Below, in pieces: positions 17,001 to 23,000 of a DNA stretch of 64,000 nucleotides (the stretch's first letter is position 1; the number at the start of each line of letters is the position of its first letter). The notes beneath the pieces were generated by a model, which did not search any database, had not been told where the DNA came from, and worked only from the letters and a program-made list of their open reading frames with translations. The translations under genes were made by a program, and so were the position numbers. Location: assembly GCF_001194135.2 (NCBI RefSeq), contig NC_068981.1:80462037-80526036 (forward strand). Reading direction: 5' to 3'. Source of the DNA: Octopus bimaculoides. Its lineage: Eukaryota.

Positions 17001-20000
17001 GAGTTCAAATCTTGCTTTGAAAAATGTATTGCCTATCAGTCTTCTTGGATGAAGTGTAGAAGGATAAAGTAAGAACCAGTTGAGTATTGGGGTAGATTTA
17101 ATTTACCATAGACTCCCTTTCCCCATGAATCTTTAGGGCTATATTAGAAATGATTATTTGTATTAGTATACAAATGGTAGTCAAATGAAAGAAATGATAG
17201 ACTACCAAATTAAACACAACAGTTTTTAATTTTGGAGCTCTGTTCTGGTGTCCAGTTCTTGTGGTTGACTGTTTACATCAGTCTGAAACCAATAGAATAA
17301 TCTACTAGCTATTTAAGTAAAATTCAGTTCACTATATTCAAATCTTTTAGTCAAACCTTATTGGTAGTGTAGTTGTACATAGATTAATGTATTTCTAAGA
17401 GTGGGGTGGGAAAAAGGAAAATAATGTGACATTCTTTTTAGGAAGAGCTTTGATCACATGTCTGAGTTGTGTTGAATGTTTGCTCACTACAGGCTTTGAT
17501 CCTACTTGGGCATGTCTTCTATTAGCTTGTATTTTAAGATGGTTTAATATCACCACCTGGTTATTGAGTGCCTTTTAGTGGAGTCAGCTGTTTCAAGCAT
17601 TCAGTGTCAGGCCATCCTGTTTGAGGACTGCTTCATGTCATCTTAGAAGCCTGAAAAGGTTCATGGGTGTTGCCTTGGTGACCAAACAAGAAATGTAGAT
17701 ATAATTTCAAATAACCTTTGGTTTGAAAATAAAGAAAATAAACCTTTTACACTGAATTGTAAATATATTTAACTAGTTTAAAAAATGTTTAATATTTTGA
17801 ATTGTCTCCATGTTGGCATTTGTGCTTTATGGAATTCCATCTCATCGACTATTTTCGAATCTATGAAACTTGATAAATCTTAAACCTTATGGAAATATAC
17901 TCAGGCCTATCAGTGATTCAGTTCAAGTTGTTTGTTGGCTTAATATTTTCATATCTTTTCTTTAACCTTTTTGTTACTGTATTTATTTTGAGATGCTCTG
18001 TGTTTCTTTCAATTACGTTAAATATAACAAAGAATTTAGTAAAATAACTTAGTTATCATTCAGCTAGTGTTAGGAACATAAATTGTGACTGAGGTTTTCA
18101 AAACTTATGAAAACAAGACATTTGTACTTAGAGCCAGTTTCAGCCAGGCTGGTAATGAAAGGGTTAATGAAGGCTTATTTGATTAAATTTGTGTTAGCCC
18201 TACAATTTGAAATTATTTTTTAAACACTTTCATGTTCTTTTTTAGTGAAAAGCTGGTCTTCAGTGATGATGAAGAGGGTGAGAAACATGAAAGGTACGTC
18301 TCTCTAGCAAATACATTGAATGTTACATTTCATTTAAATGACTTATGTAGGAATATGACACACTTATCAATGATTGGCATTACAAAGGGCTTCCAGCCAT
18401 AGAAACCATATCAAAGCTGACATTGGTGCTTGATGCAGCCCTGTGGCTAACCAGATTCTGTCAAACTAACTAGCCCATTCAAGCATTGAAAATAGACATT
18501 AAATGATGCTCAAAATAGAAAATGCTGCTTCCTCTGTGTTAACATTGATTTTAGATGTTTTCCAGAAATATACCCCAAATCAGGCCATTATATCCTATTT
18601 TCTATATTTTCACTTTTAAACTCCAAAAGAATTAATAGCACCAAGTACATTTTTGGCACTTATAGGATGGTTAAATTAAACTGTGTAGCATAAAGATTTT
18701 TCAGATTTTATTTGACATTCAAACTACTATGGTAGTTTGAATATCTTAAAATACAATTACTTTACAATGTGCATATACTGTAGTCATAGTTATAAGAATT
18801 TAAGAAAGCCGATGAAAGCTTTGTGTCTGTATAAGCAAGAAACATTAGTGAGAAAACTGGCTAAATATTTTTTGTTCATGTTGGATAAAGGAGAATGGCT
18901 TTTAAGTTCATGGGTTAAAGTACATCCTTAAAATAGTTATGTTTAACTCTTTGACATTCAGTTTACTGTCAAATGCTTATTCACATTGTTTTGAATTGAA
19001 CTTGCATTATCTTCGAGATTTCATTGATGTGATGGTTATTAGTCAGAATGACATTGCTGGGTAGGTGTGAGAGTTTGGCCAGTTTGAACATAAAACAAGT
19101 AGAATATTTGAGCAGATATGGTCAGTTTAAATGCTAAAGGGTTAGATCTCCATTATAAATTTTAATTTCAAAGACCAGTTGCTAAAAACAATCATATTCA
19201 ATGTTTAATTTAGATTTTGGGATGCCATGTTTATCTCATTATTCCAGCAAGAAAAATGCTTGTTACCAGCTAATTACACAATCTTGATTGTACCTGTTTT
19301 TATGAAATGTTATTTTATTGGTTATTTATGGTTTGGAAATTTGACTAATCAAATGTCTTTTATAATTAACTTTTAGTGCATTATAATATAGTTCATGCAT
19401 GTTTTACAAAAATGATGCCAGTGTCACTACCAACAACAATTAGTTAGAGGATATTAGTATTTCTGAAAACAAAATTAGGGGAAGAAATTTATGTAAATAA
19501 AAAGTTCTTAGGCCCCACACAAAAATTAAGACAAATAGATTTTTTTAAATAAACTCTCCTTCTAGCTTTTCCCAGTGGGTAAGACATAATAAAGATTTTT
19601 AGTTGAAGGGTTTAAACAACCTGCAATTTCATAAATACTTCCTTGAGCAATTATGGTTTAAAAAATAATTTACTGATAATGAAGATATAAACATTTAATA
19701 AAAGTAGGTTTTAATCTTTATTGGGGTGTTTATATTTAGATAATATGCAAAAATATAGTTTAGTGTGAGTCAATTCTAAATTGTTTTCCAAAGATCAACT
19801 GAATATTGAAATAAATATGCAGTGTTAGGAAATATAACAAAAGAGTTAAGTATCTTAAAAAAATGTTTTCTTTGATATATGCTTTTCTTATGCTGCAATA
19901 ATTTATTTTCTTTTACAGAAATGAAGAGAAACGGGAAAAACACCGTGAAGCAAGGGAAATACGTACTGAAGGAGGAAACTTGCGTGAAGCAAGAGAACAT

Positions 20001-23000
20001 AGAGATCCACGTGAAACACGTGCTGAAAATAGAGATGCTCGCCATGATCCACGGGAAACACGTGGTGAACCAAGGGACATTCGTCATGATCCACGAGAAA
20101 TTCGTGGTGAACCAAGGGATATTCGCCATGAAAATAGGGAAGTACGTGCTGAACCTAGAGACATACGCCGCGATATGCGTGGTGAACCTAGGGACATTAA
20201 TCTAGATCACATTCGTGAAACTAGAGATGGGCGTGGAAAACCTAGAGAAATTCGTTTTGAAGCTAGAGACATGCGTGAAAATAGGGATATAAGCGGTGAA
20301 AACCGCGATATTCATATTGAACCCAGAGACATTCGCCATGAACCACGAGAAATGCGTGGTGTATCAAGAGATATTCGCATGGAAGCCAGAGACTGCCGTC
20401 TTCAATCCTCTAGAGAAATTCGGCATGAACCTAGAGATCCTCTTCTTGAATCTCCACGAGAACTGCGTCATGGCATGGAAACACCAAGAACTATAAGACA
20501 TGAAAATCGAGATCCTTGTCTTGATCCAACCAGGGACATGCGCCATGAATCAAGAGATACTCATCTTGACTCTACTCGTGATATACGCCATGAGCCAAGA
20601 GATACACGACTTGAACCAACGAGGAATTTACGTCATGAACCAAGAGATATACGTCTTGAACCAAATAGAGGGATTCGTCTTGAACCCAGAGATTCAAGAT
20701 TAGATTCAAATAGAGATATCTGTCATGATATGAGAGATAATCGCCTTGATGCAACTAGAGACATTCGTCTTGATACCCGACATGAACCAGCTAGGGATAT
20801 TCGACTGGATGGTAGAGATTGTCGTATTGAAACTACCAGAGACTCCCGTATGGGATCAAGAGATATCCGTCTTGAACCACGAGACAGGGATATCCGTGGT
20901 GATTCTCGTGAAATAAGAGATGTCCGTGGAGAAACTAGAGATATACGAGATACTCGTGGTGATGCAATGAACCTTCAGAAACCAAGAGATGCAATTCGTG
21001 AACTAAGAGATGTCCGTGAGCAGAGAAATGATGTGCGTGCTGAACCAAGAGACATGAGGGAACAGAGAGATGCACGGGGAGAGCCTAGAGACATGAGGGA
21101 ACAGAGAGATGCACGGGGAGAGCCTAGAGACATCAGAGAACAGAGGGATGCACGGGTTGAACCAAGAGATATTAGGGAACAGAGAGATGCACGAGTAGAG
21201 TCTAGAGACATCAGGGAACAGAGAGATGCACGTACTGAACCTCATGACAACAGAGAGCAGAGGGATGTACGTGCTGAATCCAGAGATATTAGAGAACAAA
21301 GAGATGTTCGTAATGAACCTCGTGATATTCGGGAGCAAAGAGGTGTGCTTGGTGAAGCACGTGACATTCGCGAGCAAAGGGATGTGCGTAGTGAAGTACG
21401 TGATATTAGAGAACAAAGAGATGTGCGTGGTGAAACACGTGACATTCGTGAGCAAAGAGATGTACGTGGTGAAGCGCGCGACTTACGTGGGGAACCACAT
21501 GACATTCGTGATCAGAGAGATGTGCGTGTTGAACCCCGTGACATTCGTGATCAGCGTGATGTACGTCCTGAGACGCGAGACATTTGCGAAACAAGGGATG
21601 TACGTGCTGAACCACGTGACATACGTGAACCCAGGGATCTGCGTACTGAACCACGTGATATTCGCGAATCAAGAGATATGCGTACTGAGCTGCGTGACAT
21701 TCGTGAGCCAAGGGATGCACGTGCTGAATCACGAGATATTCTAGAAGCAAGAGATGTGCGTGCTGAGCCACGGGATAGTCGAGAATCAAGAGATGTGCGT
21801 CCTGAATCCCGAGATGTTCGTGAGCCGAGAGATGTCTGTGCTGAGCCAAGAGACATGCGTGAGCCACGGGATGTTCGTGTTGAGCCACGAGATGTTCGAA
21901 CGGAGCCACGAGACCTTCATGAGCCTAGAGATGTGCGTGCTGAGCCACGAGACATTCGCCAGCCAAGGGATGTGCGTGCTGAACCACGAGACATTCGCCA
22001 GCCAAGGGATGTGCGTGCTGAACCACGTGACATTCGCCAGCCAAGGGATGTGCGTGTTGAACCACGAGACATTCACGAGCCAAGGGATGTGCGTGCCGAA
22101 CCACGAGACATTCGTGAACAAAGGGATGTTCGTACCGAGCCACGGGACATTTGTGAGTCTAGGGATGTACGTGCCGAGCCACGTGACATTCGCGAGTCAA
22201 GAGATATGCGTGCTGAACCGCGAGACATTCGTCAACCAAGGGATGTGCGTGCTGAGCCACGAGATATTCGCCAGCCAAGGGATGTACGTGCTGAGCCACG
22301 CGACCTTCGTGAGCAGAGAGATGTGCGTGCTGAACCAAGAGACATTGGGCGTAATGAGCCTCGAGACATTCGTGAAACCAGGGAATTGGTGCGTGGTGAG
22401 CCACGTGACATTCGAGAACCAAGAGACATGCGTGGAGAAACACGAGATATTCGTGAACCGAGGGACATGGGGCGCGGAGAAACGAGAGACATTCGTGATG
22501 CTAGAGATGTGCGTCCTGAATCCCGTGAGATTCGTGATCAGAGGGATGTACGTGTTGAATCTCAAGACATACGTGAACCTAGAGAAGCTCGAGACTCACA
22601 AGATGTTTGGGAAACGTGTGATACACGTAGTGAGACGAGAGACATCCGGGAACCGAGAGAGGTTATTTTAGATTCCCGAGATATGAGAGAAAGTAGAGAT
22701 ATACGTGTTGAAAGCAGAGATGCACGTGACCTAAGAGATAGCAGGGATTTACGAACTGAGACGCATGAAGATGGTAAAACTACCTCGGAAGAAAATGACA
22801 GAGATAATCATGAAAAACTTAAAGTAAGTATACTAATTGCAGCAATCAGTGTTTATCTACCTTTGATGTTTAGTGAAATAGTTGTCAGTTTCTGTTCTAT
22901 TCCAATATTTGATGTACTGTTTAAGGTATTTGTTACTGCTACACATGGTTTTGCATAATTAGGAAAGTTTTATTTATAATTGTTTGTTGAATTTCAATTT

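What the first reader, a model, noticed from the sequence alone, without database searches (positions are those of the whole stretch)
19919..22823. PRRC2 orthologue carries a roughly 930-aa Arg/Asp/Glu mixed-charge repeat domain in one giant exon
Seen: a 2905-nt exon, open for 968 codons, spliced in phase between exon 8 (phase 2) and exon 10 (phase 0). It encodes dozens of R-x-E-P-R-D-I / R-E-Q-R-D-V units with Arg every 3-4 residues alternating with D/E. Because the phases are asymmetric it cannot be skipped alone without a frameshift, so it looks constitutive. Established: PRRC2 proteins are translation-initiation and stress-granule associated. Arg-rich mixed-charge (RD/RE) domains in proteins such as U1-70K drive condensate formation, speckle targeting and aggregation. 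I do not know of such a block at this position in vertebrate PRRC2A/B/C or nocte. Inference: a lineage-specific condensate or RNA-binding module grafted onto a conserved translation regulator.
Basis: partly seen in the sequence, partly recalled or inferred. Interest (0 to 1): 0.85.

Follow-up and report, generated by a model that had tools for sequence, protein, structure and literature searches.

The report
Giant Arg/Asp repeat exon in PRRC2
A PRRC2 translation-regulator gene really does contain a 2.9-kb exon encoding about 950 residues of Arg/Asp/Glu repeats, and it grew by tandem amplification of a short Arg/Asp-rich exon that other invertebrates already have at that spot, so it is an extreme variant of a known feature and not a newly added module.

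Summary
Window 19919-22823 is bounded by a canonical acceptor (ttttacag|A) and donor (AAA|gtaagt). It is open for 968 codons, and the longest open stretch in 1000 shuffles was 175 codons.

The gene is a PRRC2/BAT2 orthologue (Pfam BAT2_N, E = 3e-39) and is colinear with a full-length invertebrate PRRC2 transcript.

The exon encodes R 26.5%, D 14.7% and E 13.4%, with net charge about 0. The basic unit is [E/D]-x-R-D-φ-R, 6-7 residues long, organised into 13-residue repeats. Charges are mixed far better than chance (kappa 0.018; shuffles 0.134).

Neighbouring repeats differ at 55% of synonymous sites and 14% of non-synonymous sites (dN/dS about 0.16). Arg uses all six codons. This is therefore an old, selected coding sequence, not a young minisatellite or an assembly artefact.

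The "grafted module" reading is not supported. At least ten other non-vertebrate PRRC2 loci or transcripts carry a linker of about 20-90 residues at the same place. It is mixed-charge in most and Arg/Asp-rich in several, and two have identical intron phases. Vertebrates have a non-RD linker there.

The block is most likely a disordered polyampholyte tether and multivalency module in IDR1. Transcript inclusion, function and taxonomic spread remain untested.

The parts
7913..8027 (+). Coding start and first coding exon of the PRRC2 orthologue ([18 protein letters not shown]...), the first part of the BAT2_N domain
   Evidence: ATG at 7913, donor CAACAG|gtaagt. Pfam PF07001, E = 3.3e-39, for exons 1 and 2 joined.
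8111..8349 (+). Second coding exon (..[36 protein letters not shown]..), the core of BAT2_N
   Evidence: tblastn with the L005 protein gives 80% identity.
16067..16246 (+). 'Exon 7', encoding ..[36 protein letters not shown]; a motif conserved in all orthologues
   Evidence: alignment A1; tblastn.
18246..18293 (+). 'Exon 8', encoding (S)[15 protein letters not shown](R); it ends in phase 2 (donor AAAG|gtacgt)
19919..22823 (+). 'Exon 9', the 2905-nt Arg/Asp/Glu repeat exon (1 base plus 968 codons)
19920..21029 (+). 5' third of exon 9: degenerate older units of 14-15 residues (e.g. [14 protein letters not shown].), with His and Leu common
   Evidence: TRF periods 42/45/21 with 67-82% matches. 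No lag-39 signal.
21030..22346 (+). Regular core of exon 9: about 34 copies of a 39-nt, 13-residue unit ([13 protein letters not shown], changing to [13 protein letters not shown])
   Evidence: Lag-39 mismatch by codon position is 0.20/0.12/0.39, and dN/dS is 0.16.
22347..22823 (+). 3' part of exon 9: decaying units with small indels, then a non-repeat end ...[23 protein letters not shown]
27385..27486 (+). 'Exon 10', encoding [34 protein letters not shown] (phase 0 at both ends); it holds the conserved RE[AS]W motif that marks the end of the linker
29262..29354 (+). 'Exon 11', encoding [31 protein letters not shown]
29455..29682 (+). 'Exon 12', encoding ..[40 protein letters not shown]..; the start of the conserved helical 'coiled-coil' region
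   Evidence: Same motif in vertebrate fragments and in L001, L003 and L005. The coiled-coil region of human PRRC2C mediates eIF3/eIF4G2 association (bioRxiv 10.64898/2026.02.24.707808).
45226..46026 (+). RG-motif exon of the same gene (..[18 protein letters not shown].. ..SRRGRG..); open-frame limits, splice sites not determined

Best explanation
Exon 9 is a real coding exon of a PRRC2 orthologue, most probably constitutive. It arose by repeated in-frame tandem duplication of 18/21-nt and then 39-nt units inside a short Arg/Asp-rich exon. That short exon already lay between the conserved ...[23 protein letters not shown] motif and the RE[AS]W motif. In the architecture described for human PRRC2 proteins this region is 'IDR1', between the BAT2 domain and the helices that mediate association with eIF3 and eIF4G2.

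The product is a disordered polyampholyte of about 950 residues. It is almost exactly charge-neutral and very well mixed, rich in Arg and poor in Lys and Ser. An aliphatic residue and often a Pro recur every 6-7 residues.

Shown here: the exon anatomy, positional homology with short exons elsewhere, purifying selection on the repeat, the charge patterning, and the absence of predicted structure.

Inferred mechanism:
- The block lengthens IDR1 about five-fold, into a flexible tether tens of nanometres long. This is my own rough coil estimate.
- It presents roughly 150 R-D-φ-R units. These could make weak multivalent Arg-carboxylate and Arg-phosphate contacts with itself, with other Arg-rich mixed-charge proteins, and with RNA or rRNA.
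- The expected effect is higher avidity of PRRC2 for mRNPs, 40S complexes and stress-granule-type condensates. Because Ser is scarce, this would not be switchable by phosphorylation.
- At the RNA level the exon is 61% purine and has no pyrimidine tracts. That composition should favour definition of an unusually long exon.
For: - Exon anatomy and open frame.
- PRRC2 identity: BAT2_N E = 3.3e-39. tblastn of the full-length transcript L005 is colinear from 7964 to 62743.
- Purifying selection and age: neighbouring 13-codon units have pS 0.545, pN 0.139 and dN/dS 0.16. Lag-39 mismatch is 0.39 at third codon positions and 0.12-0.20 at first and second positions. Arg codons: CGT 95, AGA 70, AGG 32, CGA 29, CGC 20, CGG 11.
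- In-situ origin: L003 has an RD exon at 11181-11391 (211 nt) and L002 at 17839-17986 (148 nt). The window exon is 2905 nt. All three are 1 mod 3, lie after a phase-2 intron and before a phase-0 intron, and are R/D-rich with Pro.
- In the spliced transcripts L005 and L014 the homologous short segment sits between the two conserved motifs.
- No alternative charged mini-exon exists in introns 8 or 9. The 39-nt unit occurs only inside the exon.
- Disorder and charge pattern: AF2 single-sequence pLDDT 48.5 with no secondary structure; kappa 0.018 against shuffles of 0.134 ± 0.015; NCPR -0.008.
- Literature. RD and Arg-rich mixed-charge sequences condense in a length-dependent, Arg-dependent way (bioRxiv 10.1101/771592). 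The PRRC2 layout is BAT2-IDR1-coiled coil-IDR2-RG, PRRC2A, B and C are stress-granule proteins, and removing the coiled-coils of PRRC2C reduces its association with eIF3 and eIF4G2 (bioRxiv 10.64898/2026.02.24.707808).
Against: - No transcript evidence for this species was obtainable, so inclusion of the exon is inferred from sequence only.
- The block fails the FCR >= 0.7 criterion used to define mixed-charge domains (maximum 0.63). It has an R-D-x-R pattern and not alternating RD/RE dipeptides, so results from RD dipeptide repeats may not transfer.
- A well-mixed neutral polyampholyte may behave as an inert expanded coil and not as a cohesive module.
- The selection detected could be selection against harmful variants, such as loss of charge balance, and not selection for a positive function.
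- The AF2 run used a single sequence, which is weak evidence for disorder.
Confidence: 0.6

Rival explanations
1. The block is a tolerated spacer. It is translated but functionally neutral. Replication slippage or unequal crossing-over inflated a low-complexity exon in an already disordered region, and selection only keeps the frame open and the charge balanced to avoid poly-Arg toxicity or aggregation.
For: - PRRC2 orthologues show other lineage-specific low-complexity expansions. Examples are the Pro/Gln run at window 31499-32044, the HWRREDK units at 37864-38259, the (DNRRDDR)n array in L005 and (ERGDRG)n in L001.
- Linker length at this site varies from about 23 to 87 aa among other taxa.
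- Near-identical adjacent units ([13 protein letters not shown], three in a row) show the array is still turning over.
Against: - dN/dS is 0.16 while synonymous sites are near saturation. Arg, Asp and an aliphatic residue keep fixed positions across about 147 units, using all six Arg codons. That is more constraint than keeping a frame open requires.
- Charge mixing is far tighter than composition alone gives (kappa 0.018 against 0.134).
Confidence: 0.25
2. The region is a pseudo-exon or intronic minisatellite. It is not part of the mature mRNA, or only rarely so. The real transcript would use another, unrecognised short exon or a different junction.
For: No RNA evidence was available. Tandem repeats with a unit length divisible by 3 can stay open by construction, and two other frames of the repeat hold open stretches of 172-308 codons. 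The two protein libraries searched returned no protein containing this block.
Against: - The coding frame has 0 stops in 968 codons, against 15-152 in the other frames.
- The codon-position pattern of divergence and dN/dS of 0.16 are not expected for non-coding satellite DNA.
- Splice sites are canonical, with the same phases as the homologous exons of L002 and L003.
- Joining exon 8 directly to exon 10 shifts the frame into a stop (read from the sequence).
- No other charged open stretch lies in either flanking intron.
- The protein libraries also lack the N-terminus of this species' PRRC2, so their silence is uninformative.
Confidence: 0.07
3. The block is a structured repeat: a charged single alpha-helix (ER/K-like) or another regular fold acting as a rigid ruler.
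For: Arg recurs at i, i+3 and i+4 spacing (155 gaps of 3 and 69 gaps of 4), with acidic residues between, which superficially resembles salt-bridged helices.
Against: - Pro is 7% and recurs every 6-13 residues.
- AF2 predicts no helix in 260 residues, with mean pLDDT 48.5.
- Lys is nearly absent, and the E4(K/R)4 blocks typical of such helices are missing.
Confidence: 0.05
4. Assembly artefact: the array length, or the exon itself, is a mis-assembly of repeats.
For: The window comes from an assembly with gaps (N runs at 50448-51411 and 51870-51879). A few adjacent units are nearly identical.
Against: There are no Ns in or near the exon. Most units differ from their neighbours at 13-28% of bases (TRF 72-87% matches), which makes them uniquely placeable. 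The frame is intact throughout and all indels are multiples of 3.
Confidence: 0.03

Closest known systems
PRRC2/BAT2 family (vertebrate PRRC2A/B/C, Drosophila Nocte)
   Same: - BAT2_N domain.
- Conserved GGWAGAQ.E.DY..KL.FSDDE motif.
- WR.RR...ER.R.RREEEERR helical region.
- RG-motif region; a large, mostly disordered protein.
- The gene family already contains giant exons that encode disordered regions. Human PRRC2B exon 16 encodes 694 aa (PMC12700102).
   Different: In three vertebrate fragments the segment between FSDDE and WRQRR is 87-112 aa, acidic and Ser/Pro-rich, with 3-5% Arg. Here it is 1061 aa, of which about 950 are Arg/Asp/Glu repeats. The giant exon lies in IDR1, not in the RG region. 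It cannot be skipped in frame, unlike PRRC2B exon 16.
Short Arg/Asp-rich linker exon of other invertebrate PRRC2 orthologues (loci L001-L003, L005, L007, L008, L014 and annelid-like contigs L013-L026)
   Same: Same position, and the same intron phases in L002 and L003. Similar composition in the closest cases: R 16-30%, D 16-27%, FCR 0.55-0.66, net charge about 0, with Pro present and PRD/RDR motifs.
   Different: Those linkers are about 23-87 aa with no regular periodicity. The window has 983 aa with a 13-residue period and a fixed R-D-φ-R core. The taxa of those contigs are unknown, because they are metagenome or metatranscriptome contigs.
[quoted passage not shown]
   Same: Long, disordered, Arg far more common than Lys, near-neutral, and opposite charges finely interleaved. 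Encoded by a purine-rich exon (61% purine), as described for many R-MCDs (PMC12629991).
   Different: - FCR is 0.55, below 0.7.
- The pattern is R-D-x-R-x-x, not RD/RE/RS dipeptide runs.
- Ser is 3%, so there are no phospho-switchable RS elements.
- Arg codons are 60% CGN, not mainly AGA/AGG.
- The host protein is a cytoplasmic translation and stress-granule factor in the species studied, not a speckle protein.
- It is about 5-15 times longer than the R-MCDs tested in those papers (roughly 60-280 aa).
Other RD arrays within PRRC2 orthologues (L005 (DNRRDDR)n of about 130 aa; L001 (ERGDRG)n)
   Same: Arg/Asp heptad or hexad tandem repeats in the same protein family.
   Different: They lie at a different position, just before the RGG region. 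They are much shorter and have a different unit sequence.

Membership tests
PRRC2 / BAT2 family | N-terminal BAT2_N domain (Pfam PF07001) | tested here: met
   hmmscan E = 3.3e-39, 135.7 bits (cut-off 25), profile positions 1-112 of 196, for exons 1 and 2 joined.
PRRC2 / BAT2 family | Colinearity with a full-length family member, including the ..[22 protein letters not shown].. motif and the WR.RR..ER.R.RREEEERR helical region | tested here: met
   tblastn of the L005 protein gives 11 colinear segments from 7964 to 62743. Motifs seen.
PRRC2 / BAT2 family | Central RG/RGG motif region | tested here: met
   The exon at 45226-46026 encodes [18 protein letters not shown]...SRRGRG. Feature as described in bioRxiv 10.64898/2026.02.24.707808.
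PRRC2 / BAT2 family | Association with eIF3, eIF4G2 and 40S, and stress-granule localisation | not testable with these tools
   Known only for the human paralogues.
Mixed-charge domain as defined in bioRxiv 10.1101/771592 | Length above 60 aa | tested here: met
   About 945 aa.
Mixed-charge domain as defined in bioRxiv 10.1101/771592 | Fraction of charged residues of 0.7 (threshold as printed in section 6 of the preprint; the comparison sign is lost in the held text, so I read it as 'at least') | tested here: not met
   FCR is 0.55 overall. The maximum is 0.63 in any 60-aa window, and 0 of 909 windows reach 0.7.
Mixed-charge domain as defined in bioRxiv 10.1101/771592 | Positive-to-negative charge ratio between 1:0.7 and 1:1.3 | tested here: met
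   264 positive and 272 negative residues, ratio 1:1.03.
Mixed-charge domain as defined in bioRxiv 10.1101/771592 | Arg-enriched subclass (R much more common than K) | tested here: met
   R 257, K 7.
Mixed-charge domain as defined in bioRxiv 10.1101/771592 | Length- and Arg-dependent condensation; speckle incorporation | not testable with these tools
   Needs expression and in vitro assays.
RS domain | Runs of Arg-Ser dipeptides that can be phosphorylated | tested here: not met
   Ser is 31 of 968 residues (3.2%). Ser occurs mainly as the variable 'x' in E-S-R-D.
Charged single alpha-helix (ER/K motif) | Long uninterrupted helix with i/i+4 Glu-Lys/Arg blocks and no Pro | tested here: not met
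   Pro is 7.1% and recurs every 6-13 residues. AF2 gives no helix and pLDDT 48.5. The AF2 run used a single sequence, so it counts as supporting evidence only.

The most novel reading that the evidence does not exclude
This would be the longest natural Arg-rich, charge-neutral, perfectly interleaved polyampholyte array described in any protein. In this lineage it would have changed what PRRC2 does. For example, it could send part of the protein to speckle-like nuclear bodies, or change the material state of neuronal mRNP or stress granules. The same long linker would let one PRRC2 molecule bridge eIF3-bound 40S complexes and distant mRNP partners. Array length would then be a tunable, possibly polymorphic, parameter of translational control.
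Probability: 0.12. Interest if true: 0.65.

Novelty: new variant of a known kind. Interest (0 to 1): 0.38.

Why it matters
PRRC2 proteins are under active study as translation-initiation and stress-granule factors. Their disordered regions are mostly compared only among vertebrates.

This locus gives a natural extreme: one region (IDR1) expanded about 11-40-fold by amplifying a short ancestral Arg/Asp-rich exon, and kept under purifying selection. It provides a ready-made length series, from about 50-90 aa in other invertebrates to about 950 aa here. That series can test how the length and charge patterning of Arg-rich polyampholytes affect condensate partitioning, RNA or ribosome avidity, and the spacing between the BAT2 domain and the eIF3-binding helices.

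It is also a clear case of a giant exon born by in-frame tandem duplication.

It does not overturn anything known. Lineage-specific low-complexity expansions in large disordered proteins are common.

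Tried and rejected
1. The search for homologous proteins with the whole exon hit the 8000-candidate level with nothing at E <= 1e-5. The candidate list was probably saturated by repeat words, so the result is uninformative.
2. An exhaustive HMMER search of 1.84 billion representatives with the exon gave 118 hits. 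The six best inspected are unrelated tandem-repeat proteins (APRDVEG, VDPRGLRDGLDAR, TWDVRHE and similar). There was no self-hit and no orthologue, so the library lacks this protein and absence means nothing.
3. The conserved-part searches returned only fragments of at most 536 aa. No full-length protein was returned, and nothing was closer than 75-86% identity in the N-terminus. Close relatives such as other cephalopods could therefore not be compared.
4. Exact look-ups of the genomic ORF with two possible starts and of P0020 were not on record.
5. The single-sequence metagenome scan found nothing. The alignment-based scan worked.
6. Pfam on the exon and a PDB sequence search of the conserved parts found nothing.
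7. Literature searches for PRRC2 in cephalopods or molluscs returned only a passing mention in a transcriptome paper. Accession-number searches to identify the taxa of the comparison contigs found nothing.
8. Pfam on the retroelement-like ORFs at 46.3-49.3 kb gave nothing usable.

Rejected ideas: a single alpha-helix, an RS domain, a young minisatellite, and an alternative mini-exon in the flanking introns. Reasons are in the rival explanations and the membership tests.

Full report

Yes. Window 19919-22823 is preceded by a pyrimidine-rich tract and AG (tgcttttcttatgctgcaataatttattttcttttacag|A). It is followed by a consensus donor, AAA|gtaagt.

Read from 19920, it gives 968 codons without a stop. 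The other five frames of the same stretch contain 15-152 stops. In 1000 base shuffles the longest open stretch averaged 97 codons and never exceeded 175.

The upstream exon (18246-18293, (S)[15 protein letters not shown]) ends with two bases, AG. These join A19919 to make an Arg codon. The downstream exon starts in phase 0 at 27385 with [14 protein letters not shown].... Joining exon 8 directly to exon 10 shifts the frame into a TAG inside exon 10, which I read from the sequence. The exon therefore cannot be skipped alone.

Inside the exon there is no pyrimidine tract followed by AG, and only one GTRAGT. Internal alternative splicing looks unlikely.

**2. What the exon encodes**

Composition is R 26.5%, D 14.7%, E 13.4%, P 7.1%, I 6.3% and V 4.4%. 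Lys is 0.7% and Ser 3.2%. There are 264 positive and 272 negative charges.

The dipeptide RD occurs 121 times, DR twice and ER never. The pattern is therefore directional and not an alternating dipeptide run.

The elementary unit is a hexa/heptapeptide, [E/D]-x-R-[D/E]-φ-R-(x), where φ is mostly Ile, Val or Met. About 147 such cores cover 685 of the 968 residues. Gaps between successive Arg residues are 3 residues (155 times) or 4 residues (69 times).

Two units make the 13-residue, 39-nt repeat seen by Tandem Repeats Finder and by autocorrelation. The array has three zones:
- **19920-21029:** a degenerate 5' third with 14-15-residue units rich in His and Leu.
- **21030-22346:** a regular core with about 34 units. 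The unit [13 protein letters not shown] gradually becomes [13 protein letters not shown].
- **22347-22823:** a decaying 3' part ending in non-repeat sequence.

The 39-nt unit occurs nowhere else in the window.

**3. Coding sequence or open minisatellite?**

A repeat whose unit is a multiple of three can stay open for trivial reasons, so I tested the pattern of divergence.

Each base of the regular core was compared with the base 39 nt downstream. Mismatch is 0.20, 0.12 and 0.39 at codon positions 1, 2 and 3. For neighbouring 13-codon units, a Nei-Gojobori count gives pS = 0.545 and pN = 0.139, so dS is about 0.97, dN about 0.15 and dN/dS about 0.16.

Arg is written with all six codons (CGT 95, AGA 70, AGG 32, CGA 29, CGC 20, CGG 11). 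At the fixed Arg positions the first codon base is split between A and C.

The amino-acid pattern has therefore been maintained while synonymous sites approached saturation. The array is old, it is translated or has been for most of its history, and it is not a collapsed or inflated assembly of identical units. A few adjacent units are almost identical (three copies of [13 protein letters not shown]), so some turnover continues.

**4. What gene is it?**

The first two coding exons (7913-8027 and 8111-8349) match Pfam BAT2_N with E = 3.3e-39.

A 12-kb metatranscriptome contig (L005, JGI 3300018897) carries a full-length invertebrate PRRC2 mRNA. Its protein aligns colinearly to the window from 7964 to 62743, covering about its first 1965 of 2895 residues. 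The window therefore holds the 5' two-thirds of a PRRC2 orthologue and cuts it at the 3' end.

Other family landmarks are present:
- ...[23 protein letters not shown] (exons 7-8).
- ...[29 protein letters not shown]... (exon 12).
- An RG-motif exon at 45226-46026.

A recent preprint describes the family layout as BAT2, IDR1, coiled-coil, IDR2, RG region, IDR3. In it, deleting the coiled-coils of human PRRC2C lowered association with eIF3 subunits and eIF4G2, and an AlphaFold3 model placed one of the helices in a groove of the eIF3 core. It also reports PRRC2A, B and C as stress-granule proteins (bioRxiv 10.64898/2026.02.24.707808). The repeat exon lies in IDR1, immediately upstream of those helices.

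I could not identify the source organism.

**5. Comparison with other PRRC2 genes**

The protein libraries returned no close relative and no full-length protein. Genomic and transcript contigs from metagenome collections did give a useful series. I measured the segment between FSDD[ED] and the next conserved motif, RE[AGS]W.

| Source | Linker length | Composition / notes |
|---|---|---|
| Window | 983 aa | R 0.26, D 0.15, E 0.14, FCR 0.55, net -10 |
| L003 (= L006) | 87 aa | R 0.30, D 0.24, FCR 0.66 |
| L007, L008 | RD exon of about 70 aa | NRDHDRGRERKDRGYDGDDRRRDDRDSRGREWRDDPRGDGRRDRRDDRRPPDDRPRSRDSDRDRPEYERQR |
| L014 (spliced transcript) | about 75 aa | mixed-charge |
| L002 | 60 aa | R 0.23, D 0.17, FCR 0.55 |
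| L001 | 56 aa | R 0.23, D 0.27, FCR 0.61 |
| L005 (spliced transcript) | 49 aa | R 0.16, K 0.10, D 0.16, FCR 0.57 |
| Annelid-like contigs (about a dozen) | about 50 aa | SPRDRRPHKDRSGGRGKEN...RYRDRKR |
| P0022 | about 23 aa | mixed Lys/Arg/Asp/Glu |

Three vertebrate fragments (P0222-P0224) have 87-112 aa between FSDDE and WRQRR, with only 3-5% Arg and FCR 0.24-0.28.

In L003 the RD segment is a separate exon (11181-11391, 211 nt). In L002 it is also separate (17839-17986, 148 nt). Both follow a phase-2 intron, precede a phase-0 intron and are 1 mod 3 in length, exactly like the 2905-nt exon here. In L001 the downstream intron is absent.

None of the roughly 25 loci has a long or periodic array. 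The simplest reading is that a short, near-neutral, mixed-charge exon, Arg/Asp-rich in several lineages, is ancestral at this site in at least several non-vertebrate lineages. In the lineage of the window it was amplified 11-40-fold. The block was not grafted on.

The taxa of the comparison contigs are unknown. Whether the short form is "lophotrochozoan" or broader, and how far the long form extends among relatives, stays open.

**6. Physical character**

- Charges are mixed far more evenly than composition alone would give. My implementation of the Das-Pappu kappa gives 0.018, against 0.134 ± 0.015 for shuffles. Sequence charge decoration is -0.43, against -4.1 ± 2.2.
- Net charge per residue is -0.008.
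- AlphaFold2 on 260 residues of the core, run on a single sequence, gives mean pLDDT 48.5 and essentially no secondary structure. With Pro every 6-13 residues, this argues against a charged single helix.
- The block meets three of the four sequence criteria for Arg-enriched mixed-charge domains in bioRxiv 10.1101/771592 (length, charge ratio, R much more common than K). It fails the fraction-of-charged-residues threshold of 0.7, with a maximum of 0.63 in any 60-residue window.
- It has almost no Ser, so it lacks the phospho-regulation typical of RS-containing speckle proteins.
- At the RNA level the exon is 61% purine and 48% GC in a window that is otherwise about 32% GC. CGN makes up 60% of the Arg codons, so it fits only partly the 'GA-rich' class described for R-MCD mRNAs in PMC12629991.

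**7. How it most likely works**

*Shown:* a selected, disordered, neutral, Arg-rich repeat of about 950 residues lies between the BAT2 domain with its FSDDE motif and the helical region that mediates eIF3 association in human PRRC2C.

*Inferred:*
- It acts as a long flexible tether. My rough coil estimate is an end-to-end distance of a few tens of nanometres.
- It also acts as a multivalent array of about 150 R-D-φ-R units. These units could make many weak Arg-carboxylate and Arg-phosphate contacts, raising the avidity of PRRC2 for RNA, ribosomal complexes and condensates such as stress granules.
- Length- and Arg-dependent cohesion of this kind was shown for RD repeats and natural R-MCDs in human cells and in vitro (bioRxiv 10.1101/771592). 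Transfer to this sequence is an inference.

The main rival is that the block is a tolerated spacer, with selection only policing frame and charge balance. The strength and position-specificity of the constraint argue against that but do not exclude it. The pseudo-exon, structured-repeat and mis-assembly readings are each unlikely, for the reasons given under the rival explanations.

**8. Novelty and score**

The gene family, giant exons that encode disordered regions within it, and Arg-rich mixed-charge domains are all known. Human PRRC2B exon 16, for example, encodes 694 aa (PMC12700102). I found no paper describing this block or the short RD exon of invertebrate PRRC2.

It is a new and extreme variant of a known kind. 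It is a good natural length series for experiments on polyampholyte disordered regions, but lineage-specific low-complexity expansion is common. Neither expression nor function has been shown. Interest 0.38.

Noticed in passing
window 37864-38259 (+): Another exon of the same gene carries about five 'HWRRE(D/E)K'-type units rich in His, Trp, Arg and Glu, after a His/Pro run ([15 protein letters not shown]). The colinear stretch of L001 (7310-7726) is a plain Arg/Asp-rich block. This looks like a second lineage-specific remodelling of a mixed-charge region.
   Followed up: no
window 31499-32044 (+): A Pro/Gln-rich exon with about 120 residues of QP/PQ runs. It is much longer than the colinear part of the L005 protein, so it is another low-complexity expansion in the same gene.
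   Followed up: no
window about 46300-49300 (-), inside an intron: Broken open frames that look like a degraded non-LTR retroelement. This rests on my own recognition of RT-like motifs in the output. Pfam gave no significant match for three of the ORFs.
   Followed up: partly
window 50448-51411 and 51870-51879: Runs of N (964 and 10 bases). These are assembly gaps in an intron of the gene, so the window comes from a scaffold-level assembly.
   Followed up: no
window 680-1261 (+): Open frames resembling the C-terminal part of a retroelement polyprotein (..HKHRLRWTGHLIRMKDSRIPKQMLYGEL..), upstream of the gene. Not checked with any tool.
   Followed up: no
L005 (translated), residues about 1040-1190 of the 2895-aa ORF: This invertebrate PRRC2 transcript has its own array of about 130 residues, (DNRRDDR)n followed by RDRDRDRD, just before the RGG region. 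L001 has (ERGDRG)n at the equivalent place (about 9400-9600). Arg/Asp repeats have therefore arisen more than once in this family, at different positions.
   Followed up: partly
L002 14500-16800: About 23 tandem copies of a 94-nt unit. Each repeats the start of the exon encoding CRFRGPIPIPPQHRPLGSGGKDDPM.., and they lie in the intron just upstream of the real exon-7 equivalent. This is a tandemly duplicated exon 5' end or acceptor region in another species' PRRC2 gene.
   Followed up: no
P0001 and P0102: In another species a spliced fragment ends ...GEIDYRSVQRVII, reading from the exon-7 equivalent into what looks like intron. A genomic fragment reads GEIDYRSVGH.. at the same point. This could be intron retention or a truncated isoform ending just before the FSDDE exon.
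   Followed up: no
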